Below are positions 29,646 through 64,000 of a DNA stretch of 64,000 nucleotides, in pieces. The first letter of the stretch is position 1. The number at the start of each line of letters is the position of its first letter. The notes under the pieces are model-generated. The model worked only from the letters and a program-made list of their open reading frames with translations. It ran no database searches and was not told the DNA's origin. Made by a program: the position numbers and the translations under genes. Location of the stretch: positions 211,971-275,970 of the IMG/VR virus record IMGVR_UViG_3300047157_000197; one strand, written 5' to 3'.

Positions 29646-30723
29646 GCGTATATTAGATTTTCATCACCAAGCTAATAGATTATTTGGAAGATTTCTTGAT
29701 ATCAACGATTATAGAGATTCAGCCAATGGTGTTTATGATGCTATAATTGCACATAGACAAATTGAAGAAGATGGTGAAATTGAAGAACTTATTAAATATT
29801 GTAAAAAAACTACAAGAGTAATAGTAGATATAACAACCGAATCTGGTCAAATAGAACTTTTTATTGATAGATTTAATAAAATTATAAATAAACATCCATA
29901 TAAATTCATTTTAATTTCAGATGTACCTATTAATAAAGTAGTAAATTGTAAAGTGATAGATGATTATTCACTTGCATTTACATCTCATTTAAATGATTCA
30001 ATGGTTGGTAGAGTATATCATCATCCAACAGGTGCAAAATTGCAACATGGACTTGATAGTTATAATGGTTCTTTAAGAATACAAAGATTATGGTTAAATT
30101 ACTTTTTTATTACAAAATTCAGAAGAGATGTATTACCATTGAACGTTGAGTTTAATCATTATGTAAATTTAGGCGAAGGTCCACAATTTTATCAAGAACA
30201 ATTTGAAAATTTACTTAAAGAATTACCCACAACTGAAAGAAATGAAATACTTCATAATAAACAATATATAAACCCACCTGGAAAAGATATTGATATTGCA
30301 CATTTCAATGATTTAAAACACCATTGTAACACCGTAAACGTTGTAAGTGAAAACACAATAGGTAATGATATGAATAAAAACGATGATTCCTTTCATATAA
30401 CTTTCACAGAAAAAACAATTAAACCATTTGTAAGAGGACAGATACCGTTAATACATAGTTATGTAGGATTGCAATCTAAATTAAGAGAATTAGGATTTGA
30501 TTTATACGATGAATTTGTAAACCATTCATATGAAAATGAATCAGATTCAGTAAAAAGACTTGAAATGATTGTAGATGAGGGTAAACGATTAATGTACTTA
30601 GATACTGAAAATTATTTAAGAGAAAATCAAAGTAGAGTTTACAAGAATAAAAAATTATGTGAGTATTTGGTATGGCAAGGTAAAACCATGGTACATGATA
30701 TAATAGATAATATTAATATTTAA
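29638..30723 (+). CDS. GT10-like (fucosyltransferase-like) protein
   Basis: NVVSE, FTEKTIKPF, LRELGF, HSYE. Confidence 0.5.
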   Translation: MSKRILDFHHQANRLFGRFLDINDYRDSANGVYDAIIAHRQIEEDGEIEELIKYCKKTTRVIVDITTESGQIELFIDRFNKIINKHPYKFILISDVPINKVVNCKVIDDYSLAFTSHLNDSMVGRVYHHPTGAKLQHGLDSYNGSLRIQRLWLNYFFITKFRRDVLPLNVEFNHYVNLGEGPQFYQEQFENLLKELPTTERNEILHNKQYINPPGKDIDIAHFNDLKHHCNTVNVVSENTIGNDMNKNDDSFHITFTEKTIKPFVRGQIPLIHSYVGLQSKLRELGFDLYDEFVNHSYENESDSVKRLEMIVDEGKRLMYLDTENYLRENQSRVYKNKKLCEYLVWQGKTMVHDIIDNINI

Positions 30724-38168: not shown

Positions 38169-39392
38169 ATGAATGAAATGAATGAATTTAAAGTTGGATA
38201 TGTTTCCACAGAAGTGTACAAAGTTGAACAGTTTGGTAATACCTGGAAACTGATAGATTCACAAGGTACTAAAGTTGGTACTCTTGGAGCAACAACATTA
38301 ACAAGAAAAACAGCATTTAAAGAAGGTAAGGCACTTCAAGCATACATCAATAAGAATGGTAAGAAAACTTACAGAAAAGTTGATATGAATGTTTATAACT
38401 CCTTAGTTATTCCTATGAATACAGACCAAGGTGGTGTTCAGTTTGAAGATAAATCAGACCACACTGCAATAAAAGATTTTATCCACCAAGGTTCGGTATC
38501 TCTAAAACCAACTGAATTGGTTATGGAAGAATTGAAATGGAAATATCTTATCAGAAGTGCTGTGAGAGCTAAAAATATTATGATGACTGGACCGAGTGGT
38601 TGTGGTAAAACTATGGCTTCCAAAGCTTTAGTGAACGCACTCGATAGACCAGATTTCTATTTCAACCTTGGGGCAACTCAAGACCCGAGAGCTACCTTAA
38701 TTGGTAACACTCACTTCGATAAACAAAAAGGAACATACTTTTCAGAATCCGCTTTTGTTACGGCAATCAAAACTCCAAACGCAGTTATTCTGTTAGATGA
38801 GTTATCGAGAGCTCATCCAGATGCGTGGAACATCTTAATGACTGTACTTGACCAAGGACAGAGATACTTGAGATTAGATGAGGCTGATGGTTCACCAATT
38901 GTGAATGTGGCTGAAGGTGTTACTTTCATCGCTACCGCTAACATCGGTAATGAATACACATCAACAAGAGTTATGGATAGAGCAATCTTAGATAGATTTG
39001 TTACTATTGAAATGGATGTTCTTGATGATGTTAAAGAATTAGGATTATTAAAGTTTATGTTTCCTGAAGTTAAGGAATATGATTTGAAAGCAATCGCAGA
39101 AATCGCTCATCACACTAGAACTCAATCAATGAATGAGAATGGTAAGTTAACTTCAATGGTTTCCACCAGAGCATCTGTTGAGATGGCTGGGTTAATCTAC
39201 GATGGTTTCGAACTTAACGAAGCAGCTGAGATTTCAATCTATCCTTTCTTTTCTCAAGATGGTGGTGTTGATTCGGAAAGAACTTACATCAAACAATTGG
39301 TTCAGAAATACCAAATGGATGAAAATGGTGAACCTCTATTCAAAGAAGTAGATGACACCGAAAGTAATGAGGATGATATCCCTCAGTTTTAA
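38169..39392 (+). CDS. MoxR/CbbQ/CobS-like AAA+ ATPase
   Basis: GPSGCGKT, ILLDE, ATAN, DRAILDRF, STR. Confidence 0.9.
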   Translation: MNEMNEFKVGYVSTEVYKVEQFGNTWKLIDSQGTKVGTLGATTLTRKTAFKEGKALQAYINKNGKKTYRKVDMNVYNSLVIPMNTDQGGVQFEDKSDHTAIKDFIHQGSVSLKPTELVMEELKWKYLIRSAVRAKNIMMTGPSGCGKTMASKALVNALDRPDFYFNLGATQDPRATLIGNTHFDKQKGTYFSESAFVTAIKTPNAVILLDELSRAHPDAWNILMTVLDQGQRYLRLDEADGSPIVNVAEGVTFIATANIGNEYTSTRVMDRAILDRFVTIEMDVLDDVKELGLLKFMFPEVKEYDLKAIAEIAHHTRTQSMNENGKLTSMVSTRASVEMAGLIYDGFELNEAAEISIYPFFSQDGGVDSERTYIKQLVQKYQMDENGEPLFKEVDDTESNEDDIPQF

Positions 39393-39460: not shown

Positions 39461-40811
39461 ATGAAATTATTATTAGGAGATAGTGTAGATAAATTAAAAG
39501 AGTTAGATGATAACTCTATTGATTCAATCGTTACAGACCCACCTTATGGTTTATCCTTTATGGGTAAAAAATGGGATTATGATGTTCCTTCACAAGAAAT
39601 ATTTGAGGAATGTTTAAGAGTATTAAAACCAGGTGGTTATTTACTTTCATTCGCAGGTTCACGAACTTATCACAGAATGGCAGTTAGAGTAGAAGATGCT
39701 GGGTTTGAGATAAGAGACCAAATAATGTGGATATATGGAAGTGGTTTTCCAAAATCTATGAACATAGGAAAAGCTATGGATAAAGTACAAGGTAATGAAA
39801 GAGAGGTAATTGGTAAAAAGGGAGGAAAAATAGATTTTAGTAAAACTAAAAAAGGCGATACATCTTTTTATGAGACTGCTTGGGATAATAAAGATTATGT
39901 GGAGTTAGAAATAACCAAAGGAAACTCTGAATGGGAAGGTTGGGGAACTGCTCTTAAACCTGCTCACGAACCTATTGTAATGGCAAGAAAACCTTTAAGT
40001 GAAAAAACAGTAGTTAATAATGTTTTAGAATGGGGAACAGGTGGAATTAATATTGATGAAAGTAGAATAGGAACAACAACAAAAACAAATGCTGGAAAAG
40101 CAAATAAAGAAAATAACAGAATAGCTGGCTAATGGTGGATATGTAAATGATGTCTCATCACAAGAACACAATTACGGCAGATTTCCTGCAAATATTATAT
40201 TAGATAAAGAAGCAGGTAGAATCCTTGATGAACAAACAGGTGAATTATCAACTGTGGGTAGTCCTAAAAAGATTGATAATAGTAAAACATCCATTTTTGG
40301 AGCAGGTGTACCTGGATTTCAAATGTATGGTGATAAAGGTGGAGCATCTCGTTTCTTCTATTGTCCAAAAACTTCTAAAACTGATAGGAATGAAGGATTG
40401 GATGAGTTTGAGGATAAATACTATGCCGCAGGTAATCAAGCAAAAGCAGAACTAAAACGAGGTAATGTTGAGTTTAATTCCAATAAAGGTAAAGGTAAAG
40501 ATGAACGACACAATCACAATCAAGTTGGTGTAAGTAAAAACAATCACCCAACTGTTAAACCTACTGATTTGATGTTATACTTAATCAGATTAATAACACC
40601 AAAAGGTGGAACTACTTTAGACCCTTTTATGGGTAGTGGTTCAACTGGTAAAGCAGCAGTTAGAGGTGGATTTGATTTTGTTGGTATAGAAAGAGAAAAA
40701 GAGTATATGGAAATTGCAGAAGCAAGAATCCAATATGAAAAAGATAATCCTTATAGTGAAGAAAAGGAAGAACGAATACAAATAAATAAAAATGCAAATA
40801 AATTTTTCTAA
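39461..40811 (+). CDS. N6A/N4C DNA methyltransferase (one-base insertion near 40130)
   Basis: DPPY, HPTVKP, DPFMGSGSTG; removing one base restores GRFPANIILD and joins both ORFs. Confidence 0.85.
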
Positions 40812-42098: not shown

Positions 42099-42139
42099 TG
42101 ACAATATGTCAGTATAATACCAAATGGTACAAAAATTGA
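42099..42139 (+). promoter_or_regulatory. TGACA-N3-TGTCA palindrome plus sigma54-like -24/-12 element upstream of the groEL unit
   Basis: TGACAATATGTCA 42099-42111; TGGTAC-N5-TTGA 42125-42139. Confidence 0.5.
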
Positions 42140-42633: not shown

Positions 42634-44262
<1,629 letters not shown>

Positions 44263-47040: not shown

Positions 47041-48402
47041 ATGAAATTATTATTAGGAGATTGTATTGACAAACTTAAAGAGTTAGATGACAATAGTGTA
47101 GATAGTATTGTTACAGACCCACCATATGGGTTATCCTTTATGGGTAAAAAATGGGATTATGATGTTCCCTCTCAAGAAATCTTTGAGGAATGTTTAAGAG
47201 TTCTAAAACCAGGTGGCCATCTATTATCATTTGCCGGTTCACGAACTTATCACAGAATGGCAGTTAGAGTAGAAGATGCTGGATTTGAGATAAGAGACCA
47301 GATAATGTGGATATATGGTTCAGGTTTTCCAAAATCTATGAATATAGGAAAAGCTATGGATAAAGTACAAGGTAATGAAAGAAAGGTAATTGGTAAACAA
47401 AACTACTCAATTCCAAAAGCAGATAACACTATACAAGCCAGTTCCTATGGTATAAGTGGAGGTTTATTGAAAGATGGAAAAAAAGCAGAAAGATTAGTAC
47501 CTGATATAACCAAAGGAAACTCTGAATACGAGGGTTGGGGAACTGCTCTCAAACCAGCTCACGAACCAATTGTAATGGCAAGAAAACCACTTTCAGAAAA
47601 AACTGTTGTAGATAATGTATTAGAATGGGGAACTGGTGGAATTAATGTAGAGGAAAGTAGAATACCATATAAATCAAAAGATGATATGGAAATTAGAAAA
47701 AATACACATCGTGAAACAAATAAATTAGGAGATGGTAATTTTGGTGGAGGTAAATATTCACAACCTGTTGAAAGTGGCAGATTTCCTTCAAACATAATCT
47801 TTGATGAAGAAGCAGGTAAGATACTTGATGAACAAAGTGGTATATCCAAATCCACAGGTGGTAGAAGTGGAAACAAAGAAGGAGTTGGTCAAAATGGAAT
47901 ATATGGTCAATATAGTGGAGAAGTAAGAGATGAAAATCCTGGTCTTGGTGATATTGGTGGAGCATCTCGTTTCTTTTATTGTCCTAAAACTTCTAAAACT
48001 GATAGAAACGAAGGATTAGAAGATTTTGAAATAAAACAAACTGTTGGTGGAGGTGGTGGTATAGGTGATTATCAAGATGACGTAAATAGTGCAAGTGGTA
48101 AGTTTGGTAGTGAAAAAGCACCAAGTAAGAACAATCACCCAACAGTCAAACCAACAGATTTGATGTTATACCTTATTCGCTTAGTTACTCCAAAAGGTGG
48201 AACTACTTTAGACCCATTTATGGGTAGTGGTTCAACTGGTAAAGCTGCAACTCGTGGTGGATTTGATTTTATAGGTATTGAAAGAGAAAAAGATTATATG
48301 GAAATTGCAAAAACAAGAATCCAATATGAAAAAGATAATCCTTATAATGAAGAAAAGAAAGAGCGAGTAAAAATAAATAAAAATGCAAATAAATTTTTCT
48401 AG
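47041..48402 (+). CDS. N6A/N4C DNA methyltransferase, paralog of 39461
   Basis: DPPY, HPTVKP, DPFMGSGSTG. Confidence 0.9.
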   Translation: MKLLLGDCIDKLKELDDNSVDSIVTDPPYGLSFMGKKWDYDVPSQEIFEECLRVLKPGGHLLSFAGSRTYHRMAVRVEDAGFEIRDQIMWIYGSGFPKSMNIGKAMDKVQGNERKVIGKQNYSIPKADNTIQASSYGISGGLLKDGKKAERLVPDITKGNSEYEGWGTALKPAHEPIVMARKPLSEKTVVDNVLEWGTGGINVEESRIPYKSKDDMEIRKNTHRETNKLGDGNFGGGKYSQPVESGRFPSNIIFDEEAGKILDEQSGISKSTGGRSGNKEGVGQNGIYGQYSGEVRDENPGLGDIGGASRFFYCPKTSKTDRNEGLEDFEIKQTVGGGGGIGDYQDDVNSASGKFGSEKAPSKNNHPTVKPTDLMLYLIRLVTPKGGTTLDPFMGSGSTGKAATRGGFDFIGIEREKDYMEIAKTRIQYEKDNPYNEEKKERVKINKNANKFF

Positions 48403-57898: not shown

Positions 57899-58533
57899 AA
57901 GAATATAATATAAATGACCCTTGGGATTGGGTAACTACTTTTGAAAATGAAGTTGCAGAATATACTGGTTACAGATATGGTATCGCATGTGATTCTAATT
58001 CTAACGCGATACGATTATGTTTACATTATTTAAACATTACAGATACCGATATAGAAATACCAGCAAATACATATGTATCAGTTCCTAATCAAATTATATT
58101 AAGTGGTAACAGACCACAATTTAGAGATATAAAATGGAAAGGATTATATCCAATTGGAGATACAAGTATCATTGATTCTGCAACTGCATTCTATGAAGGA
58201 ATGGGTAGAGGATATGAAGATAAATTTATGATTTTATCGTTTCATTTAAAAAAGATTTTAAATATTGGACAAGGTGGAATGATACTTACAAATCGAGATG
58301 ATTTTAATGAGTGGGCAAGACCCATGATTTACGATGGGAGACATAAGGATAAATTATATAAAGAAGATGAATTTGAGTGTATCGGTTGGCATATGTATAT
58401 GAGTCCTGAATCTGCTGAAAAAGGATTAAGAATATTTAATTCAGATAAAATACAACAATTTAACGAACCATGTGGCTCATCAGAAATGTATGGAGATTTA
58501 AGAAAACAGAAAATATACCAAGATTATGTCTAA
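57895..58533 (+). CDS. short DegT-family aminotransferase lacking the C-terminal domain
   Basis: FENEVAEY, IDSA, SFHLKKILNIGQGG; only 212 aa. Confidence 0.75.
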   Translation: MKEYNINDPWDWVTTFENEVAEYTGYRYGIACDSNSNAIRLCLHYLNITDTDIEIPANTYVSVPNQIILSGNRPQFRDIKWKGLYPIGDTSIIDSATAFYEGMGRGYEDKFMILSFHLKKILNIGQGGMILTNRDDFNEWARPMIYDGRHKDKLYKEDEFECIGWHMYMSPESAEKGLRIFNSDKIQQFNEPCGSSEMYGDLRKQKIYQDYV

Positions 58534-59581
58534 AAAGAAAATAAATAGAATTTTTTTACTTGGTGATTCTTGGATTGAAGGACAAGGTACCTATTCAGTT
58601 ATACACAAAGACGGCACACTAGATGAACCTTCAATGCCTTTTGATAATACTGGTTTTGGTGGAATTAATGAGTGGAGACGAGAAAATAGTTGGAATAAAT
58701 TTTTTAGAGAAGAGTATGGAGATGATATTGATATTATAAATCTAGGTAGACAAGGAGCAGATAATAAATCAATGTTTAGTAAATTAAACTATATTTTAAG
58801 TTATGATTACCAAGAGACTGATTTAATTTTATTTGGGTTCACTTCAAAATATAGAGATTATAATATAAACCACTGCTTTGGTAAAGAAAACTTAGATAAT
58901 TGGAGAAATGATGATGAAAGAAAAACCCAAGGACAAAAACACAATGAGAATTCTTTTCTATTACATAAATCAAATCCCATTATCAAATGTCCTATTTCCT
59001 ATGAAAGATTACAAATAGCACAACAACTTTTAAAAAAGAATAATGAGAAAAACTTATTTTTAGGAAAAGAGGACTTTTATGAATCAGATGAAATTCCTGA
59101 AGCTGAAAAAGAATTTTCAAGAAAATGGTTACAAGATTTTTTTGTTGAAATATTTGATGAGAGGGTTTATGAAAATATAGCATCAACAAATTATATGTTT
59201 TATCAAAAATATTGTAAATGGAAAGGAATTAATATTTTATTCTTTGATTTGTTTGAACCATATGTAGACTCAAAATTTCCAAATGAATTCTACAACGTAG
59301 ACACAGAAATGTATATCAACTATGGTAAAAAACATTTTAGAGATATTTTAGTAGATTATGAATTTGAAAATTATAGTTTTGATGCACCATATTCGGTATG
59401 GGAATGTGGACATACGTTTCCATCTTTAAACTCAAACCATTGGTATAAAAAAGGAGAAAAGTATTCTGGTCTAATATATCATCCAAATCAACATGGTTAT
59501 AAAGCGTTATTTGATTATTTAGTAGAAAATCATCTTAATAAAGGATATGAAATAAAACCAAAAATAAAAGATATTATATGA
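58526..59581 (+). CDS. SGNH-hydrolase-like protein
   Basis: GDSWIEG, NLGRQGADN, YHPN. Confidence 0.65.
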   Translation: MSKKKINRIFLLGDSWIEGQGTYSVIHKDGTLDEPSMPFDNTGFGGINEWRRENSWNKFFREEYGDDIDIINLGRQGADNKSMFSKLNYILSYDYQETDLILFGFTSKYRDYNINHCFGKENLDNWRNDDERKTQGQKHNENSFLLHKSNPIIKCPISYERLQIAQQLLKKNNEKNLFLGKEDFYESDEIPEAEKEFSRKWLQDFFVEIFDERVYENIASTNYMFYQKYCKWKGINILFFDLFEPYVDSKFPNEFYNVDTEMYINYGKKHFRDILVDYEFENYSFDAPYSVWECGHTFPSLNSNHWYKKGEKYSGLIYHPNQHGYKALFDYLVENHLNKGYEIKPKIKDII

Positions 59582-60300
59582 AAACATTTTATTCAAATGG
59601 TGATTCAGTAGTTTGGGGAGCAGAACTAGAAAATAAACAAACAGAAAGATATTCATCAATTGTGAGTAATTTGTTTAATTGGGTAGATTGTAATAATGCA
59701 TCTGCGGGTGTTTCAAATGATTATATTTTCAGACAGACTATGAGAGATGTTTCACATTGGTTAGATACAAAAAAATGTTGGAGTGAAGAAACTGGTTGGG
59801 TAAAAAGTGATGAACTTTTTGTTTGTATTGGTTGGACATCACCAACAAGATTTGAATGGTGGACAGGAAAAGAATATCAACAAGAAAGATTATGGGCAGG
59901 ATATGATAAGTGGGGAGATAATGATAATAATAGAACCACCGAAGATGATTTCGTTTTAAATCAAACAGAAGATATACCGTCTTACATAAAAACATTGAAT
60001 CAAATAATATCATTGGGTAGTTTTTTACAAGTAAATAATATACCATATTGTTTTTACAATGTATTCTATGATTTTAAAACTTTAAAAGAACCAAAAAAAC
60101 AAATTGATAAGTTTGGTAGAAAAACACACCAAACCTCTTTAAAATCACTATGGAAGCAAATTCCTAATTTTAATGATATATCAATGTACAATTATTTAAA
60201 AACAAATGGGGGAACGTTTTTACCAAGAAAACACCCAACCAAAGAATCTCATATTAAATGGGGGAACTATTTATATAAAAGAATTAGTAATGGCCTGTAA
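59578..60300 (+). CDS. SGNH-hydrolase-like protein
   Basis: GDSVVWG, NASAGVSN, WT..R, KHPT. Confidence 0.65.
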   Translation: MKTFYSNGDSVVWGAELENKQTERYSSIVSNLFNWVDCNNASAGVSNDYIFRQTMRDVSHWLDTKKCWSEETGWVKSDELFVCIGWTSPTRFEWWTGKEYQQERLWAGYDKWGDNDNNRTTEDDFVLNQTEDIPSYIKTLNQIISLGSFLQVNNIPYCFYNVFYDFKTLKEPKKQIDKFGRKTHQTSLKSLWKQIPNFNDISMYNYLKTNGGTFLPRKHPTKESHIKWGNYLYKRISNGL

Positions 60301-60421
60301 GAAAAAACCAAAAACAATTTTAGAAAAACGATTAGAAAAAAACCTTTCCAAAAAGGAATTAGAGGAGTTTTACAAACGAGCTGCTCATAATAATCATTTT
60401 AACGAAATATTCAATAGATAA
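60290..60421 (+). CDS. small hypothetical protein
   Basis: Likely start 60290 within the tracked ORF. Confidence 0.4.
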   Translation: MACKKKPKTILEKRLEKNLSKKELEEFYKRAAHNNHFNEIFNR

Positions 60422-60666
60422 TGACACCTCAAGAGTATTATTACAAATACGTTAGAAAAGATAATAAAACCCTTTACGAAATGCGGATAAAATCCCTCGC
60501 GTGGATGTTAGATTGTTTTGAAAAGGGAACCATACGAAAACGAACAATTGTAACTCTTATACCATTATCAGAATTAATAACCCTCTTAGAGTGGTTAGAA
60601 GAACGAGAAAGATATGAAGAATGTCATACAGTTAAAACAGTAATTGAAAAAATATATGAAAATTAA
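60421..60666 (+). CDS. hypothetical protein with UVR-like C-terminus
   Basis: EERERYEECH. Confidence 0.5.
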   Translation: MTPQEYYYKYVRKDNKTLYEMRIKSLAWMLDCFEKGTIRKRTIVTLIPLSELITLLEWLEERERYEECHTVKTVIEKIYEN

Positions 60667-60880
60667 TAAAAACACGCAACACATGGAATTTTACACAAAC
60701 AACCCAAGAAATCTTCACACTCCTATTAAAAAAGGAAAACTTACGAAAAAACAAAGGAACAAAGAGATAATTTTTAATTTAGAATCTACTATTAATTTTG
60801 AAAAATCCAAAATAGGTGGTGGTAATAAAGAATTGATTGAAAAATTTCAAAACAAATTAAATCAAAAGCTAAAAGGATAG
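60656..60880 (+). CDS. hypothetical protein
   Basis: ORF track; start uncertain. Confidence 0.45.
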   Translation: MKINKNTQHMEFYTNNPRNLHTPIKKGKLTKKQRNKEIIFNLESTINFEKSKIGGGNKELIEKFQNKLNQKLKG

Positions 60881-60884
60881 TAGA

Positions 60885-61610
60885 ATGAAACCTACTAAAT
60901 TAAATTCAATTCTATTTTTAGGAGATTCGTTTACATGGGGACAGGGATTACAATATTATCATCTAATAGAAAACGAAGGTTGGGATTGGAAAAAATGTTC
61001 TAATTTTTTAGAAAGTAGAGAAAGATTTGAAAACCTTGGATATGGAGCAGATGAATATAGAAGAATAAATTCATTCCCTAACCTTGTATGTAAAGAACTC
61101 AATTGTAGACCAATCATTCCTCAACAAGAAAATGGTGGAGATAATTCTAGAATTATAGATATCTTAGAACAAATACATCTATTTGTTACCTCAAATGTAT
61201 TAGATTGTATCATTGTTCAGTTTTCTATACCCTCACGAATAAACGATACGAGATACCAACAATTTAATAATATAGATGAGATAATCATTTCAGAGATAGA
61301 AAGAATAAATGAGTTTTCAAACAAAAATAATATACCATGGTTTGGATTTTCATGGACAAAAGAGGTAGGTAGTATATTAGAGACTCAATATAAAGAAAAT
61401 TACATCCCTATCCAATATGATAATAAAGAATGGAATTATTTTAACATTGAACATCATCCACCAAGTTTTCCATTTAAAAAACTCGTTATAGCAGGAAACA
61501 AGAAAATAAAAGATTTTCATCCTAATTTAGAAGGACACAAAGTTATAAAGAATTCCATTATTAACAAACTAACACGAGTTCGACCCCCTTTTGAACTTAT
61601 AGGGAACTAA
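60885..61610 (+). CDS. SGNH-hydrolase-like protein
   Basis: GDSFTWG, NGGDN, DFHPN..GH; most similar in layout to 33766. Confidence 0.7.
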   Translation: MKPTKLNSILFLGDSFTWGQGLQYYHLIENEGWDWKKCSNFLESRERFENLGYGADEYRRINSFPNLVCKELNCRPIIPQQENGGDNSRIIDILEQIHLFVTSNVLDCIIVQFSIPSRINDTRYQQFNNIDEIIISEIERINEFSNKNNIPWFGFSWTKEVGSILETQYKENYIPIQYDNKEWNYFNIEHHPPSFPFKKLVIAGNKKIKDFHPNLEGHKVIKNSIINKLTRVRPPFELIGN

Positions 61611-61614
61611 CATT

Positions 61615-61767
61615 ATGATAAAAAAAGAATGGACGTGGATGTTAAATCTACCAACAAAGACCCATAAGAACGAGACCATCAATCAAGATAACCTCGAAGA
61701 TGGAATAGATGATATTATATCAACTCCCAAAGAAACTCCTTACAATGATGATGAATACGATAATTAA
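61615..61767 (+). CDS. small acidic protein
   Basis: 50-aa ORF read by eye. Confidence 0.4.
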   Translation: MIKKEWTWMLNLPTKTHKNETINQDNLEDGIDDIISTPKETPYNDDEYDN

Positions 61768-61873
61768 TCCCTTATAACTCAACTAATCCCTTTTCGTTCT
61801 TTTGTCGTGGGGGGTCGAATGAGTCGTAAGAAAAATTTTTTACCCTATTTTTTATTGATAGTATTTATATAGA

Positions 61874-62014
61874 ATGAAACAATGTAGAAAATGTAATATA
61901 GAATTACAAGTATTTAATCCTTCAAGTGGACGATATTATATTTGTGGTAAATGTAATGATGTAACTTATCCTACCGAAGATATAGATAAGGTAGTAGAAA
62001 GAGGAAGAGATTAA
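61874..62014 (+). CDS. small zinc-ribbon protein
   Basis: CRKC...CGKC; TATTTATA upstream. Confidence 0.5.
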   Translation: MKQCRKCNIELQVFNPSSGRYYICGKCNDVTYPTEDIDKVVERGRD

Positions 62015-62520
62015 CTAACCCTATATACATAATACCCTATATACAGGTATACCGAATCCCACTACCGCATACTCTATACTCCCATACTCCCATACCAACA
62101 GTACCCCTACTCCAGACTCAACCCCAAACCCTTTCCCCCATAATAACCAAAACGATAACACCCTCGAACTCCCGATACTCACCTAAAACTTTCCCTATAA
62201 CTCTCTCTATTCCAATGTGTTAAATGGGGTAAAAGGGGGAGCTGTGAAAGTACGAGGTTTTTAATCCTTTTTAAGAGGTCTGAGATTGAATCCGTACCAA
62301 GATATTACACCCTACCCTAATTAACCACTATACCCTCTTATATGGAGTGTACAAGGGAGTTGGGAGTGCACATACTCACTATGGGGTTGAATATTACACC
62401 CTATGTCATATTATGATATGATGTAGTTCCCACTTTCTACCACCCGATACCACTATATCACTATGGAGAGGAGCCTCAAGCGTATGTGTTGTTGGAGGTT
62501 ATTTTTTTCCGGAGTAACTA

Positions 62521-62679
62521 TGACACATTGTCACACCCCCTACTTGGGACTCAATTGCATTATTCGTAATTCTACACTATGACACCTTGTCACCCGATTA
62601 TGGATTATTTAAAATATTGGAATAAACCGCCCATTTCATTGTCATATTCGTAAATCGATGATACTATGACACATTGTCA
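62521..62679. repeat. three CTA-TGACAC(A/C)TTGTCA palindromes
   Basis: 62521-62533, 62580-62592, 62667-62679. Confidence 0.9.
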
Positions 62680-62688
62680 TGAGATTTA

Positions 62689-62720
62689 TTTGTTTATTTA
62701 AAAAAATTGTCGTATCTTTA
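62689..62720 (+). promoter_or_regulatory. Bacteroidota sigma70-type promoter
   Basis: TTTG-N20-TATCTTTA. Confidence 0.6.
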
Positions 62721-62819
62721 GGGTGGTTGTGGGTGGGAGTGTACACATCAGTATATAGGGGTCACCAGCGGCACTGGAGTACTGGAGTGGAAAATAAATT
62801 AAAAATAAGTCCTAAATTG

Positions 62820-62851
62820 TTTGGTAGTCTCAGTTATTTTTCGTATATTAG
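62820..62851 (+). promoter_or_regulatory. Bacteroidota sigma70-type promoter
   Basis: TTTG-N20-TATATTAG. Confidence 0.65.
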
Positions 62852-62860
62852 TCATGTAAT

Positions 62861-63079
62861 ATGACTGATATGAGAGATATAAAGAAATTAGTTCCCTATA
62901 TAGGGTTAGGTGTAGTGATTGCCATTATACTGTTGTTGGTACCGATGATTATTCGAGGTTTTTTCGCGATATTGTTACTTTTGATGAAAAATCCACTTGA
63001 ATTCCTTATTGGAACCACGATTTTGCTCCTGTGTATGTATATAGGGGAGAAGATAATAAATAAACCATTAAATAAATAA
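62861..63079 (+). CDS. small membrane protein
   Basis: Mostly hydrophobic; promoter upstream. Confidence 0.6.
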   Translation: MTDMRDIKKLVPYIGLGVVIAIILLLVPMIIRGFFAILLLLMKNPLEFLIGTTILLLCMYIGEKIINKPLNK

Positions 63080-63082
63080 AAC

Positions 63083-63415
63083 ATGAGAAACATTACCAAA
63101 ATCCTCGACAGAAGTCAGAGGTTATTCCTAGCTGGGAATATGAAAAAGAGTTATTCTATCGCGATTGATGGGATTACCGAACTATCCCAAGTAAACAGAA
63201 GATTAAACGAAGAAACCCAAGGTTGGGATTTAAAGAAAGCGTACGATTACAAGGGTACTTACAAGATTCAAGGTAAAACTCTTACCAATTGGATGGAGAA
63301 ATTATGGACAATAGTTGAAAATACTGGAGTTGAACCGATTGTAGAGGAGTATGAAACTGATATGATTCAGTACAGTATAGATAATACACAGACGTTAGTA
63401 AAGAATAGAAAATAA
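63083..63415 (+). CDS. hypothetical protein
   Basis: ORF track. Confidence 0.65.
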   Translation: MRNITKILDRSQRLFLAGNMKKSYSIAIDGITELSQVNRRLNEETQGWDLKKAYDYKGTYKIQGKTLTNWMEKLWTIVENTGVEPIVEEYETDMIQYSIDNTQTLVKNRK

Positions 63416-63426
63416 TTCTAATTTTA

Positions 63427-63458
63427 TTAGGATATATCAAATAAATTTTGTATATTAG
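63427..63458 (+). promoter_or_regulatory. Bacteroidota sigma70-type promoter
   Basis: TTAG-N20-TATATTAG; no ORF follows. Confidence 0.7.
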
Positions 63459-63464
63459 CCCCTG

Positions 63465-63828
63465 TAGTTGAGGTTGATGATTGAGAATATAGGGTTTGAT
63501 TCCCTCTCTAGTTAATCTCTAAAGACCTCCTCTTAATAGAATTAGAGGCCGTCAGTAGTGTTGGGAGATACACCTACTATAAAAACTGAATCTCTTTTAA
63601 AGAAATGTGAGCTGTTGGTGGTATTTTCTCACTCTAAACAACGAACCACCACATATAACGATGATGAGTCACAGGCGATGAAATGATACTACGCTCGGAA
63701 TCGAATTTCATCCACAGATTAGGGGTTTTCTGTGGAGATTAATAGGAGCCAACTCAACTCTCTCCTATCCTAAGTGTTCAATCTGAACCACCCACTAAGT
63801 TATGGCTTCCTTCTTAGTGGGTTTTTTT
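63465..63828 (+). ncRNA. candidate structured non-coding RNA of unknown family
   Basis: Promoter- and terminator-bounded, no ORF, many complementary segments including 5'/3' long-range pairing. Confidence 0.6.
63790..63828 (+). terminator. intrinsic terminator
   Basis: ACCCACTAAG...CTTAGTGGGT followed by a T-run. Confidence 0.8.
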
Positions 63829-63887
63829 ATTCCCTATACTCTGGAGCGGGAACATGACATAATGTCAGATGCTGCTCCTGTACCTAT

Positions 63888-63907
63888 TGTTAATAACTTG
63901 TTAATAA
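63888..63907. repeat. tandem TGTTAATAA (DnaA-box-like TTATTAACA on the minus strand)
   Basis: 63888-63896 and 63899-63907. Confidence 0.45.
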
Positions 63908-63932
63908 CTTTTTTAAAATAAACCTCTTTTTA

Positions 63933-63964
63933 TTAGGTTTTTACAAAAAATAGTCGTATATTAC
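63933..63964 (+). promoter_or_regulatory. Bacteroidota sigma70-type promoter
   Basis: TTAG-N20-TATATTAC. Confidence 0.65.
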
Positions 63965-64000
63965 ATATGTAATAAGTAATAATCCTTAAAACTAAAAAAT

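What the first reader, a model, noticed from the sequence alone, without database searches (positions are those of the whole stretch)
61770..62860. Compositionally odd non-coding region: candidate origin or genome terminus
Seen: the only long mostly gene-free stretch; higher GC; strongly C-rich + strand at 62015-62210 with several C3-C5 runs (G-quadruplex potential on the minus strand, e.g. 62105-62139); repeats ACCCTATATACA x2, ATACTCCC x2 and ATATTACACCCTA x2; three TGACA-N3-TGTCA palindromes; then four host-type promoters in 1.3 kb. Inference: replication origin, packaging site or start of the first-injected early region.
Basis: partly seen in the sequence, partly recalled or inferred. Interest (0 to 1): 0.6.

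Follow-up and report, generated by a model that had tools for sequence, protein, structure and literature searches.

The report
Phage early-control seam with host heat-shock operators
This stretch is the single join between the last genes and the first early genes of a widespread marine giant phage of Flavobacteria-type hosts; it holds a unique C-rich tract, a conserved DNA core, a burst of host-type promoters and, unexpectedly, several copies of the palindrome that sits in its hosts' heat-shock gene promoters.

Summary
The window is the last 64 kb of a 275,970-bp viral contig whose first 2,024 bases repeat window 61901-64000, so the assembly wraps round here. About 98% of its genes read rightward.

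Window 61770-62860 is the one seam between the last gene and the first early genes. Its parts, left to right:
- a conserved 46-aa zinc-ribbon-like gene;
- the most extreme C>G tract of the genome (C78/G9 in 200 nt, z=8), unstructured as RNA;
- a roughly 300-bp non-coding core conserved as well as coding DNA;
- three TGACA-N3-TGTCA palindromes with conserved half-sites and free spacers;
- Bacteroidota-type sigmaA promoters (TTTG / TAnnTT[T/A]G).

Marine RNA contigs cover the early genes and a new roughly 370-nt ncRNA, but not the seam.

The same palindrome sits 10-13 nt upstream of sigma54 promoters of dnaK, groES, grpE, htpG and clpB in Bacteroidota. It also precedes the phage's own Hsp20 gene and GroEL operon.

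A genome terminus is not supported: depth is 1x and the end overlap is noisy. An origin is untested. The related Flavobacterium phage immuto has 12-nt iteron arrays at its seam, but this tract is not periodic. G-quadruplex potential is weak and not conserved.

The parts
61768..61873 (+). Conserved non-coding leader after the 50-aa ORF 61615-61767. It can fold into a long imperfect hairpin (61771-61830) followed by an A5T6 run.
   Evidence: 93-96% mean pairwise identity among 4 sequences (window, L085, L070, L078). Fold -17.9 kcal/mol, z -1.45, not significant. Function not established.
61874..62014 (+). 46-aa CxxC-N17-CxxC mini-gene (zinc-ribbon-like), the last ORF before the seam.
   Evidence: Start, stop and frame are kept, with no indels, in L085, L070 and L078. 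Only sub-threshold Pfam hits: Zn_Ribbon_TF at E 0.0055. The contig-end overlap begins inside it, at 61901.
62015..62213 (+). C-rich, G-poor tract that starts right after the stop codon. Candidate Rho-utilisation (rut-like) transcription stop, or alternatively a degenerate protein-binding repeat field.
   Evidence: C78/G9 in 200 nt, genome-wide outlier at z=8.0. RNA fold only -4.5 kcal/mol over 196 nt. Sequence drifts, with 1-nt indels, but stays C-rich in relatives: 67-68 C / 12-13 G in close ones, 56/17-18 in the G001 group. No periodicity. No RNA contigs here. Rho is present in 5 of 5 candidate-host-clade genomes.
62214..62509 (.). Conserved non-coding core. It begins with G-runs (62225-62240) and holds ATATTACACCCTA x2 and a TCATAT-N4-ATATGA palindrome. 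Function unknown (candidate cis-acting DNA site).
   Evidence: 88-98% identity from 62230 to 62509 across five relatives, as high as the neighbouring coding DNA. No ORF of 30 aa or more up to 62462; the 39-aa ORF 62463-62582 reaches in but is not kept in L085. No RNA-fold signal on either strand, z -1.15 / +1.16. No Rfam match.
62521..62533 (.). Palindrome 1 (TGACA-CAT-TGTCA).
   Evidence: Half-sites are kept and the spacer varies in relatives: CAT against CGC. Enrichment.
62580..62592 (.). Palindrome 2 (TGACA-CCT-TGTCA), preceded by a conserved ATTATTCGTAAT box (62558-62572).
   Evidence: Half-sites are kept and the spacer is CCT against AGG in relatives. The G001-group relatives have a 1-mismatch site at the same distance from P2, -241 against -240.
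62667..62679 (.). Palindrome 3 (TGACA-CAT-TGTCA), ending 9 nt before the -33 box of P1. It is preceded by a conserved ATTCGTAAAT box (62645-62657).
   Evidence: the G001 group has a site at -150 against -153. The spacing to P1's -33 box is about the same in both clades, 9-10 nt.
62689..62720 (+). Promoter P1, Bacteroidota sigmaA type (-33 TTTG 62689-62692; -7 TATCTTTA 62713-62720).
   Evidence: The -7 box is 100% conserved in five relatives and also present in G001. The consensus TAnnTTTG is that of flavobacterial sigmaA promoters (PMC9723704).
62721..62746 (+). G-cluster leader at the predicted start of the P1 transcript (GGG-GG-GGG-GGG pattern).
   Evidence: Nearly invariant in five relatives: one substitution at 62741 in L078 and L084. 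G001 has a different sequence with the same G-run pattern at the same place. G4Hunter +1.36. The role is inferred only: leader, or R-loop initiation zone.
62747..62819 (.). Hypervariable spacer and mosaic boundary.
   Evidence: 49% identity with indels over 62750-62788. The X7 virome depth jumps from about 40x to about 470-555x to its right. 6 of 19 metagenome contigs start 66-365 nt upstream of P2, against about 2.3 expected by my estimate from contig lengths.
62820..62851 (+). Promoter P2 (-33 TTTG; -7 TATATTAG) for the first early genes (72-aa membrane ORF 62861-63079; 110-aa ORF 63083-63415).
   Evidence: 97% conserved. RNA contigs begin at 62910/62926 in two metatranscriptomes. The two ORFs have no Pfam or PHROG family.
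63427..63830 (+). Promoter P3 (63427-63458), then a roughly 370-nt non-coding RNA ending in a terminator hairpin (63787-63830).
   Evidence: RNA contigs 63582-63805/63825 in X15 and X16. Conserved blocks and covarying stems in 8 variants. No Rfam, tRNA or tmRNA match.
63855..63867 (.). Palindrome 4 (TGACA-TAA-TGTCA), between the ncRNA terminator and P4.
   Evidence: Half-sites are kept and the spacer is ATG in relatives. G001 has a perfect site at the same place.
63933..63964 (+). Promoter P4 (-33 TTAG; -7 TATATTAC). It drives the 86-aa ORF that continues at contig position 2025.
61901..64000 (.). Stretch repeated at the contig head (contig 1-2024): an assembly wrap-around, not a demonstrated terminal repeat.
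   Evidence: 96.6% / 99.3% identity. The differences are G/C homopolymer +/-1, one 90-bp gap exactly at head position 500/501, and a few substitutions. An independent X1 contig matches the tail copy over 61765-62237 with 0 gaps. Depth is 1x.
42099..42139 (+). Outside the finding: the same palindrome plus a sigma54-like -24/-12 element (TGGTAC-N5-TTGA) at the head of the operon that ends in GroEL (42646-44262).
   Evidence: GroEL matches its PHROG at E 4e-172. The layout equals host groES/dnaK promoters.

Best explanation
Window 61770-62860 is the single transcriptional seam of a one-directional, circularly mapping genome of about 274 kb. The genome belongs to an uncultured marine jumbo phage related to Flavobacterium phage immuto. 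The seam is the control region between the end of the last gene and the first early genes.

Proposed working, left to right:
1. Transcription arriving from the long rightward gene array is stopped. Right behind the stop codon of the last mini-gene lies a 200-nt C-rich, G-poor, unstructured tract, which is what a Rho-loading (rut) site looks like. This is inferred.
2. A roughly 300-bp core is held constant at the DNA level. Its function is not known; it may be a cis-acting site such as an origin.
3. Three copies of TGACA-N3-TGTCA stand in front of two tandem host sigmaA promoters, P1 and P2. A fourth copy stands before P4. This palindrome is the element that Bacteroidota place 10-13 nt upstream of the sigma54 promoters of their heat-shock genes. 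The phage itself uses it before its Hsp20 and GroEL genes. The seam copies have no sigma54 element behind them. They are therefore most likely stand-alone binding sites for the same, still unnamed, host factor. They would either couple early transcription to it or draw it away from the host regulon. This is inferred.
4. P1-P4 then drive small ORFan early genes and an abundant structured ncRNA. The sequence shows this, and RNA contigs support it.

The contig ends meet here because the assembler went round the circle, not because virion DNA ends here.
For: Seam position:
- 263 of 267 ORFs of 80 aa or more are on the + strand, and GC skew is positive throughout.
- The head of the contig repeats the tail.

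Early region:
- Promoters of the genome-wide consensus TT[T/A]GG-N17-TTCGTATATTTG number about 30-35 copies, essentially all on the + strand. Four of them lie within 1.3 kb here.
- A string of 50-110-aa ORFs without families follows.
- RNA contigs cover 62910-63825 but not 61733-62910.

C-rich tract:
- It is a unique outlier at z=8 and unstructured at -4.5 kcal/mol.
- Its composition, not its sequence, is conserved in two clades.
- It is not periodic.
- Rho is present in 5 of 5 genomes of the candidate host clade.
- Immuto has an intrinsic terminator at the equivalent spot.

Palindromes:
- Enrichment is 5 against 0.13 expected.
- Half-sites are conserved while spacers and flanks vary.
- Positions relative to P2 are conserved in the 75%-identity clade.

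Host link:
- Sites with at most 1 mismatch upstream of groES number 10 in 5.6 kb of Bacteroidota loci, against 0 in 21.8 kb of other phyla.
- Perfect palindrome-N10-13-TGGCA composites occur in 21 of 201 genomes of the class, against 0 for the reversed control.
- The genes behind them are DnaK, GroES, GrpE x2, HtpG, Clp ATPase and thioredoxin.
- The literature reports sigma54-dependent heat-shock genes in Flavobacteria (PMC9723704, PMC12316311).
- The phage GroEL operon has the same composite, and the Hsp20 gene has a tandem pair.
- The phage has 6 perfect sites in 0.27 Mb, against 1-12 in whole host-clade genomes of 1.7-4.5 Mb.
- No phage enhancer-binding protein was found.

Host clade:
- TerL is 54% identical to that of Flavobacterium phage immuto, and GroEL is up to 63% identical to Flavobacteriaceae.
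Against: - No direct transcript ends or starts were available. All runs were Logan contigs, which cannot show 5' or 3' ends, and their absence over the seam may be low coverage or strain variation.
- Rho dependence is inferred from composition alone.
- The equivalent position in immuto carries strictly periodic ACCCGT iterons, which suggests protein binding rather than Rho loading.
- The factor that binds the palindrome is unknown, so activation, repression or titration cannot be told apart.
- In Flavobacteriaceae groES promoters the left half-site is often degenerate.
- Only about 10% of sampled genomes have a perfect composite.
- The high conservation of the 62214-62509 core is not explained by this model.
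- A replication or packaging role can coexist with it.
Confidence: 0.6

Rival explanations
1. Replication origin. One version: the C-rich repeat field and conserved core bind an initiator, as iterons do in T4 oriE, lambda ori or plasmid origins. Another version: promoter P1 with its invariant G-cluster leader makes a persistent R-loop that primes rightward, co-directional leading-strand synthesis, as at T4 oriF/oriG, ColE1 or mtDNA. Either may coexist with the control-region reading.
For: - The cultured relative immuto has, at the same seam and nowhere else in 160 kb, two arrays of ACCCGT at a 12-nt period next to an early promoter.
- T4 oriE likewise has evenly spaced 12-nt repeats and depends on an early promoter. 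oriF and oriG are a promoter plus an unwinding element (PMC3016281).
- TerL is of T4 type.
- The core 62214-62509 is conserved as DNA without coding or RNA-fold signal.
- The G-run pattern right after P1 is kept in two clades.
- A single origin at the seam firing rightward would fit a genome with all genes and a uniform skew in one direction.
Against: - The window's own C-rich tract shows no even spacing: the best autocorrelation is z 2.5 over 40 lags.
- There is no DnaA-box cluster.
- No AT-rich unwinding element stands out in a 70% A+T genome.
- There is no skew switch.
- Replication genes are not adjacent.
- Even for T4 oriE, the role of the iterons is not established (PMC3016281).
- No copy-number or replication-intermediate data exist.
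Confidence: 0.25
2. Physical genome terminus or packaging signal. The seam would be the edge of a direct terminal repeat (the 2.1-kb contig-end overlap), or a pac/cos site where the terminase cuts, so that the early region enters the cell first.
For: - The contig starts and ends inside or next to the seam with a 2.0-2.1-kb overlap.
- Many DTR phages (T7, T5, SPO1) have non-coding repeats and strong early promoters at the left end. This is established knowledge.
- Metagenome contigs tend to break just upstream of P2.
Against: - Depth over 61868-62544 equals unique depth in a virome (35-41x against 37x), and depth is flat through 64000 in X1.
- The overlap begins inside a conserved ORF.
- The head's first 500 nt carries homopolymer errors and a 90-bp gap that independent contigs lack.
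- IMG/VR found no end repeat.
- TerL is gp17-like, a type known for headful packaging of permuted genomes (inference from family).
- The contig breaks coincide with a mosaic boundary and a 15-fold depth jump, which explains them.
Confidence: 0.08
3. The C-rich tract is a degenerate protein-binding repeat field homologous in role to immuto's ACCCGT arrays, rather than a Rho-loading site. It would bind, for example, a phage nucleoid, partition-like or silencing protein.
For: - It occupies the same position in the seam as the immuto arrays.
- ACCCT is 27-fold enriched (9 against 0.33), with ATAC spaced 7-9 nt apart over 62025-62092.
- ACCCTATATACA x2 is conserved in relatives.
- CCCTATA-type words recur through the seam and the early region, and in G001.
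Against: - There is no significant periodicity in the window or its close relatives.
- Most of the tract drifts in sequence with indels while keeping only its composition.
- Immuto's arrays contain G and are much less skewed, z 3.1.
Confidence: 0.25
4. G-quadruplex element on the minus strand (62105-62139) acting in replication or regulation.
For: 62081-62154 is the best G4Hunter-type window of the genome, at -1.88. It is also the only extended motif (loops up to 15) in the genome.
Against: - No canonical motif (loops up to 7) exists anywhere in the genome.
- The CCCC-AAA-CCC-TTT-CCCCC run is replaced in relatives at 85% identity, whose scores drop to -1.3 to -1.56.
- What is conserved is C-richness, not the tract arrangement.
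Confidence: 0.05

Closest known systems
Seam of Flavobacterium phage vB_FspM_immuto (Immutovirus, MW353177.1, positions 66230-66940)
   Same: - Nearly all genes lie on one strand.
- The seam follows a block of sugar-modification genes and precedes about 40 tiny ORFs.
- The seam is C-rich with short repeats.
- It ends in a Bacteroidota promoter with a -7 TATCTTTAGG box, like P1.
- TerL is 54% identical.
   Different: - Immuto has an intrinsic terminator, then two strictly periodic 12-nt ACCCGT arrays around a purine-rich centre.
- It has no TGACA-N3-TGTCA in its first 100 kb.
- It has no G-cluster leader.
- It carries 7-deazaguanine genes that the window's phage lacks.
- The seam is not annotated or discussed in the papers found.
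Bacteroidota sigma54-dependent heat-shock promoters (F. psychrophilum motif SM4; PMC9723704, PMC12316311)
   Same: The same 13-bp palindrome consensus. In hosts, and in the phage's GroEL operon, it lies 10-13 nt upstream of TGGCAC-N5-TTGC/TTGA.
   Different: The four seam copies have no -24/-12 element behind them and stand next to sigmaA promoters. Neither paper was found to mention the palindrome: I read only search hits of both, and a full-text search of the library for papers combining the relevant terms found none. Its binding factor is unknown.
Rho-dependent terminators (rut sites, e.g. lambda tR1). Established knowledge: C-rich, G-poor, unstructured RNA of about 80 nt or more, downstream of a stop codon.
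   Same: C 39% / G 4.6% over 196 nt. MFE -4.5 kcal/mol. The tract starts at the first base after a stop codon. The host clade has Rho.
   Different: No 3'-end mapping and no Rho inhibition data. The tract is longer than needed and carries conserved words such as ACCCTATATACA x2.
T4 replication origins oriE (12-nt iterons plus early promoter) and oriF/oriG (promoter plus unwinding element, R-loop primer) (PMC3016281)
   Same: T4-type terminase. A repeat field next to an early promoter. A G-rich transcript start that would favour an RNA-DNA hybrid.
   Different: The repeats are not evenly spaced in this phage. There is no defined unwinding element, and no functional data of any kind.
Left-end early regions of T7, T5 and SPO1 (terminal repeat, then clustered strong host-RNAP promoters and host-takeover mini-genes)
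   Same: A cluster of strong host-type promoters followed by tiny ORFan genes directly after a non-coding repeat-rich stretch.
   Different: No terminal-repeat depth signal. The terminase is of headful (gp17) type.

Membership tests
Direct terminal repeat / physical genome end | The same sequence at both ends of virion DNA, giving about 2x read depth | tested here: not met
   The contig ends overlap by 2.0-2.1 kb. Virome contigs over 61868-62544 have depth 35-41, against 36.5-37.1 for unique sequence. X1 is flat at 7-11 through 64000.
Direct terminal repeat / physical genome end | Fixed read starts and ends at the terminus | not testable with these tools
   All runs that hold the locus are kept as assembled contigs, not raw reads.
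Iteron-type replication origin | A cluster of evenly spaced direct repeats | tested here: not met
   Autocorrelation of 62015-62215 peaks at z 2.5 (lags 6 and 30). The immuto arrays give z 6.9 at lag 12. Short words are enriched but irregularly spaced.
Iteron-type replication origin | Replication starts here (copy-number peak, autonomous replication) | not testable with these tools
   There is no cultured host-phage pair for this genome and no time-series reads.
Host DnaA-dependent origin | A cluster of DnaA boxes | tested here: not met
   TTATCCACA with at most 1 mismatch: 35 in the window against 29.6 expected, with a single site (63708) near the seam.
Promoter-primed (R-loop) origin, T4 oriF/oriG type | A promoter followed by an element that stabilises an RNA-DNA hybrid or unwinding | tested here: inconclusive
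   P1 is conserved, and its transcript would begin with a nearly invariant G-cluster. No distinct AT-rich unwinding element could be singled out. Hybrid formation is not testable here.
Rho-dependent terminator (rut site) | A C-rich, G-poor, unstructured stretch of about 80 nt or more in untranslated RNA behind a stop codon | tested here: met
   C76/G9 in 196 nt starting at the base after the TAA of ORF 61874-62014. MFE -4.5 kcal/mol. The property is conserved in two clades.
Rho-dependent terminator (rut site) | Rho-dependent transcript 3' ends downstream | not testable with these tools
   There is only indirect evidence: no RNA contigs between 61733 and 62910 in two metatranscriptomes, and Rho present in 5 of 5 host-clade genomes.
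Operator of a dimeric DNA-binding protein | An inverted repeat whose half-sites are conserved while spacer and flanks vary; several copies near promoters | tested here: met
   Half-sites are invariant and spacers differ in 5 relatives. Positions are kept in the 75% clade. Copies stand before P1, P4, the Hsp20 gene and the GroEL operon.
Bacteroidota sigma54 heat-shock promoter | The palindrome followed at 10-13 nt by a -24/-12 element (TGGCAC-N5-TTGC) | tested here: not met
   Not met for the four seam copies. Met for the phage site at 42099-42139 (TGGTAC-N5-TTGA), and for host dnaK, groES, grpE, htpG and clp promoters.
G-quadruplex motif | Four runs of 3 or more G (C on the + strand) with short loops, conserved | tested here: not met
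   There are 0 canonical motifs in the genome and one extended motif here. The runs are not conserved in relatives.
Bacteroidota sigmaA promoter | -33 TTTG and -7 TAnnTTTG about 19-21 nt apart (PMC9723704) | tested here: met
   P1 is TTTG-20-TATCTTTA and P2 is TTTG-20-TATATTAG. P3 and P4 have TTAG at -33. About 30-35 genome-wide copies, essentially all on the + strand, carry TATATTTG.

The most novel reading that the evidence does not exclude
The seam's cluster of stand-alone heat-shock operators is a decoy or hijack device. It would work together with the copy before P4 and those before the phage's own Hsp20 and GroEL genes. On injection, and still more after replication, the phage DNA would offer more high-affinity sites for the host's sigma54 heat-shock regulator than the whole host chromosome: 6 perfect sites in 0.27 Mb, against 1-4 in the Flavobacteriaceae-type genomes tested. 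This would rewire the host chaperone response, and time early transcription, in favour of the phage. The palindrome itself would then be the so far undescribed operator of the Bacteroidota heat-shock regulon.
Probability: 0.25. Interest if true: 0.8.

Novelty: new variant of a known kind. Interest (0 to 1): 0.6.

Why it matters
- The phage is widespread. The locus is held nearly complete by 14 seawater, estuary and virome DNA runs from about 13 studies (2017-2025), and in part by six marine metatranscriptomes. It belongs to a little-studied group of large flavobacterial phages whose genomes read in one direction.
- The seam is the one place where end-of-cycle and start-of-cycle signals meet. 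It is therefore the natural place to look for the group's origin, its transcription insulator and its early switch.
- The palindrome gives a concrete, testable handle on two open points. First, which factor controls the sigma54-dependent heat-shock regulon of Bacteroidota: the promoters are known, while an operator was not found in the literature searched. Second, whether a phage plugs its early programme and its own chaperone genes into that circuit.
- The region also yields a new structured, expressed phage ncRNA family.
- It offers a clean natural example of a mosaic boundary: an early module shared almost identically by a population 15 times more abundant.

Tried and rejected
- Nucleotide searches of GenBank phages with 61000-64000, both near and distant mode: no match.
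- Rfam at gathering threshold and at E up to 10: nothing credible.
- ARAGORN on the window and on 9 relatives: no tRNA or tmRNA, despite a T-arm-like insert in some ncRNA variants.
- Protein-based locus searches in viral contigs with the flanking 241-aa and 110-aa proteins: no relatives.
- A tblastn of the 110-aa protein against GenBank phages: none.
- My P2 pattern for the collection scans was one base off the window's own P2. It matched the G001-type promoter and still returned 19 related loci.
- Generic sigma70 promoter scan: not above chance, and the wrong model for this host.
- RNA-structure reading of the conserved core: z -1.15 / +1.16, rejected.
- Coding reading of the C-rich tract (53-aa minus-strand ORF) and of the 61-aa ORF over P1: rejected because relatives carry 1-, 4- and 11-nt indels.
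- 7-Deazaguanine DNA, which would forbid G4: no DpdA or Que genes by Pfam TGT, nor by tblastn with immuto proteins. A weak QueC-domain hit lies in an unrelated 504-aa ORF.
- A leftward promoter inside the C-rich tract (62128-62096): not conserved, rejected.
- A sigma54 element behind seam palindrome 1 (TGGGAC-N4-TTGC): wrong spacing and not conserved, rejected.
- A phage-encoded sigma54 activator: the only PF00158 hit is a CbbQ/MoxR AAA_5 ATPase.
- Microcystis phage Mel-JY01 (best TerL hit): genes lie on both strands at its start, so it was not pursued as an architectural comparator.
- Papers on immuto, Immutovirus and Mel-JY01: nothing on termini or the seam.
Full report
**What the window is.** The window is the last 64 kb (contig 211971-275970) of a 275,970-bp IMG/VR virus contig rated complete. 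The first 2,024 bases of the contig repeat window 61901-64000 at 96.6% (first 500 nt) and 99.3% (the rest). The differences are mostly +/-1 in G or C runs. There is also one 90-bp gap exactly at head position 500/501 and a few substitutions. Independent contigs from other samples match the tail copy without gaps over 61765-62237. Further right they carry the head copy's substitutions. The ends are thus two noisy or allelic readings of one locus. The map is circular, about 273.9 kb, and window 64000 runs on into contig 2025.

**Genome layout.** 263 of 267 ORFs of 80 aa or more lie on the + strand. GC skew is positive in every 5-kb bin, with no sign switch. The finding sits at the only place where the end of this one-way array meets its beginning.

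**Who it is.**
- The large terminase (contig 104909-106501) is Pfam Terminase_6N, the T4 gp17 type.
- Its best cultured matches are Microcystis phage Mel-JY01 (56%) and Flavobacterium phage vB_FspM_immuto (54%). T4-like cyanophages follow at about 32%.
- The phage GroEL is closest to Flavobacteriaceae and other Bacteroidota, up to 63%.
- About 30-35 promoters of consensus TT[T/A]GG-N17-TTCGTATATTTG lie on the + strand across the genome. This is the -33 TTTG / -7 TAnnTTTG signature of flavobacterial sigmaA (PMC9723704).
- The locus is held at 88-92% of its words by 14 seawater, estuary and virome DNA runs from about 13 studies. Six marine metatranscriptomes hold part of it.
- The genome is therefore an uncultured, widespread marine jumbo phage of a Flavobacteriia-type host, distantly related to Immutovirus.

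**The observation.**
- The C-rich tract is more than a local oddity. The window 62014-62213 (C78/G9) is the most extreme C>G 200-mer of the genome, z=8.0 against 3.9 for the runner-up.
- TGACA-N3-TGTCA occurs 5 times in the window, against 0.13 expected. There are 6 unique sites in the genome.
- The 'gene-free' stretch does contain one real mini-gene, a 46-aa CxxC...CxxC ORF (61874-62014) kept intact in relatives.
- The promoters are real but of Bacteroidota type. The generic sigma70 scan is at chance.

**Comparative anatomy.** One metagenome scan returned 19 related loci. Five of them (L085, L070, L078, L080, L084; about 85% identity) align through the seam. The conservation profile is:

| Window coordinates | Feature | Mean pairwise identity |
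|---|---|---|
| 61752-62031 | leader and mini-gene | 93-100% |
| 62032-62229 | C-rich tract | 66-86%, with indels including single bases (so not coding) |
| 62230-62509 | core | 88-98% (62390-62469: 98%) |
| 62510-62709 | palindrome field | 80-88% |
| 62710-62749 | P1 -7 box and G-cluster | 94% |
| 62750-62788 | spacer | 49% |
| 62829-62868 | P2 | 97% |

- In the palindromes the half-sites never change, while the 3-nt spacers and the flanks do. This is the footprint of a dimeric DNA-binding protein.
- A more distant clade (G001 / L025, about 75% identity) shows the same order of parts. A last small gene is followed by a C-rich field (56 C / 17 G), then G-rich bits. One-mismatch palindromes then sit at -241 and -150 from P2 (the window has -240 and -153).
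- The order continues with P1 with the same -7 box, a different leader with the same G-run pattern, P2, small genes, the ncRNA, a perfect palindrome and the next promoter.

**The cultured relative.** Immuto is also one-directional. It has one seam, at 66230-66940. The seam lies after the same kind of sugar-modification gene block and before about 40 tiny ORFs.
- The immuto seam opens with a terminator hairpin. Two arrays of ACCCGT at a 12-nt period follow, around a purine-rich centre. It ends in a promoter with -7 TATCTTTAGG.
- Paired ACCCGT occurs 9 times there and nowhere else in 160 kb. Autocorrelation gives z=6.9 at lag 12.
- The window's C-rich tract has enriched words: ACCCT 9 against 0.33 expected, and ATAC at 7-9-nt intervals. 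It has no significant period.

**Transcription.**
- Two metatranscriptomes give contigs over 62910/62926-63458/63611 and over 63582-63805/63825. These cover the early ORFs and the ncRNA up to its terminator.
- They also give scattered pieces of upstream genes, but nothing between 61733 and 62910. Contigs cannot show ends or levels, so this is supportive only.
- As RNA the C-rich tract is essentially unstructured, -4.5 kcal/mol over 196 nt. It begins at the base after a stop codon.
- Rho is present in 5 of 5 genomes of the candidate host clade.
- This is what a Rho-loading site looks like. Immuto has an intrinsic terminator at the same point. I therefore read the tract as the stop for incoming rightward transcription, with the degenerate-iteron reading as a live rival.

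**Terminus.** In the virome X7, contigs over 61868-62146 and 62197-62544 have depths 35 and 41.5, against 36.5-37.1 for the unique genes to the left. In X1 the depth stays at 7-11 through 64000. A terminal repeat covering the contig overlap would give 2x. The overlap also begins inside a conserved ORF. Together with a gp17-type terminase, this argues against a fixed end here.

**Mosaic boundary.** The X7 data show something else. From about 62700-62848 rightwards, near-identical contigs have depth 470-1500. The early module is therefore shared by a population about 15 times more abundant, which differs to the left of it. Metagenome contigs tend to begin 66-365 nt upstream of P2: 6 of 19, against about 2.3 expected by my own estimate from their lengths. 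The seam is a mosaic junction, and that explains the assembly breaks.

**Origin.**
- There is no DnaA-box cluster and no skew switch. The latter is uninformative in a one-way genome.
- The core shows no RNA-fold signal and no even iterons.
- The parallels with T4 are real but untested here. T4 oriE has evenly spaced 12-nt repeats next to an early promoter, and oriF/oriG are a promoter plus an unwinding element with an R-loop primer (PMC3016281). The parallel with oriE rests on immuto rather than on this window.
- The unexplained conservation of 62214-62509 and the nearly invariant G-cluster at the start of the P1 transcript keep this reading alive at about one in four.

**The palindrome.**
- The two perfect sites outside the seam precede chaperone genes. 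A tandem pair (contig 30161, which has one mismatch, and 30193) lies about 90 nt before an Hsp20 gene, Pfam E 6e-8. Window 42099 heads the operon that ends in GroEL.
- Behind 42099, at 12 nt, stands TGGTAC-N5-TTGA, a sigma54-like -24/-12 element.
- In 14 Bacteroidota groES-groEL loci there are 10 palindromes with at most one mismatch in the groES upstream region. There are none in about 52 loci of other phyla.
- In five host-clade genomes the composite also precedes dnaK (two Flavobacteriaceae, both perfect palindromes) and htpG.
- In 201 genomes sampled from the class, the perfect composite occurs in 21 genomes (22 sites), against 0 for the reversed control. One site lies in an unpublished genome, G186. 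No claim depends on it, because G029 has the same sequence.
- Eleven sites were examined. The genes behind them are DnaK x2, GroES, GrpE x2, HtpG, a Clp ATPase and thioredoxin. The other three are LemA, DUF308 and Bflower.
- Published work shows that these genes have sigma54 promoters in Flavobacterium and that such promoters need an activator (PMC9723704, PMC12316311). In the hits I read neither paper mentions the palindrome, and a full-text search for papers combining the relevant terms found none that describes it.
- Whole host-clade genomes hold only 1-12 perfect palindromes. The phage holds six, four of them in 1.35 kb.
- The seam copies lack a -24/-12 element, and the phage has no enhancer-binding protein.
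- The most economical reading is that they bind the same host factor, next to sigmaA promoters. Palindrome 3 ends 9-10 nt before P1's -33 box in both clades.
- Whether this activates, represses or titrates cannot be decided here.

**G-quadruplex.** The genome has no canonical motif. The tract is the best G4Hunter-type window (-1.88), but relatives lose the key runs. The conserved property is composition, not tract geometry.

**Verdict.** The finding is a real, conserved, multi-part control region: the seam of a one-way phage genome.
- 'Terminus' does not.
- 'Origin' and 'packaging' remain untested.
- The new element is the link between its palindromes and the host heat-shock regulon.

Noticed in passing
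window 63459-63830 (promoter P3 at 63427-63458): A roughly 370-nt structured ncRNA with its own promoter and terminator. Eight variants occur in marine metagenome contigs (about 240-420 nt). They share several blocks:
- UGAUUGAGA..CUCUAG;
- AGG[C/U]GAUGAAA(U)GAUACU;
- a hairpin with a UAAGGGGUU loop and covarying stems;
- CUCUCCUAUCCUAAG plus a covarying GUUCA..UGAAC hairpin.

The middle is swapped between variants, and some carry a T-arm-like GUUGGUUCAAUUCCAAC. RNA contigs occur in two metatranscriptomes. There is no Rfam, tRNA or tmRNA match.
   Followed up: partly
window 42099-42139; contig 30161-30205 (L092:1162-1206): The phage's GroEL operon and Hsp20 gene carry the host-type heat-shock palindrome. 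For GroEL a sigma54-like -24/-12 element follows. The phage chaperone genes thus look wired into the host sigma54 heat-shock circuit.
   Followed up: yes
host loci L174, L175, L177, L194-L205 (Bacteroidota genomes): TGACA-N3-TGTCA lies 10-13 nt upstream of sigma54 promoters of dnaK, groES, grpE, htpG, clp and trx. It appears to be a general operator of the Bacteroidota heat-shock regulon. It was not found described in the papers searched. One site (L196, G186) is in an unpublished genome and is not used.
   Followed up: partly
window 62700-64000 against 58000-62600 in run X7: Near-identical contigs of the early module have 470-1500x depth, against about 37x for the genes to the left. The early region is shared by a population about 15 times more abundant, and the seam is a recombination or mosaic boundary. 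L085 also lacks window 60911-61551.
   Followed up: partly
contig 1-500 (head copy of window 61901-62387): The first 500 bases of the contig carry about 10 homopolymer indels and a 90-bp deletion exactly at position 500/501. Independent contigs do not show these, so the contig end is of low quality. IMG/VR therefore scored the contig 'linear' although it closes on itself.
   Followed up: yes
contig 2614-2850 (L007): A second GC-rich, ORF-free stretch lies between early mini-genes. It has C- and G-runs and a T-run, and it is weakly similar to G001 (L025 4082-4201 by tblastx). It may be another small RNA or regulatory element.
   Followed up: no
whole contig (e.g. 9919, 14945, 28130, 32205 ... 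261307): The genome has about 30-35 near-identical strong promoters (TT[T/A]GGATAT..-TTCGTATATTTGTA), all rightward. This gives a ready map of transcription units for the genome.
   Followed up: partly
MW353177.1 66273-66372 and 66694-66850 (L089): Flavobacterium phage immuto has two unique arrays of ACCCGT repeats at a 12-nt period in its seam. They are not annotated in the record. They are a strong candidate origin or protein-binding field in a cultured, testable phage.
   Followed up: partly
window 61874-62014: A conserved 46-aa CxxC-N17-CxxC zinc-ribbon-like mini-protein is the last gene before the seam. It is absent from the G001 clade, which keeps part of its upstream leader.
   Followed up: partly
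window 38169-39392, 39461-40811, 47041-48402: A CbbQ/MoxR-type AAA+ ATPase and several DNA methyltransferase genes lie upstream. Unlike immuto, no 7-deazaguanine (DpdA/Que) genes were found.
   Followed up: partly
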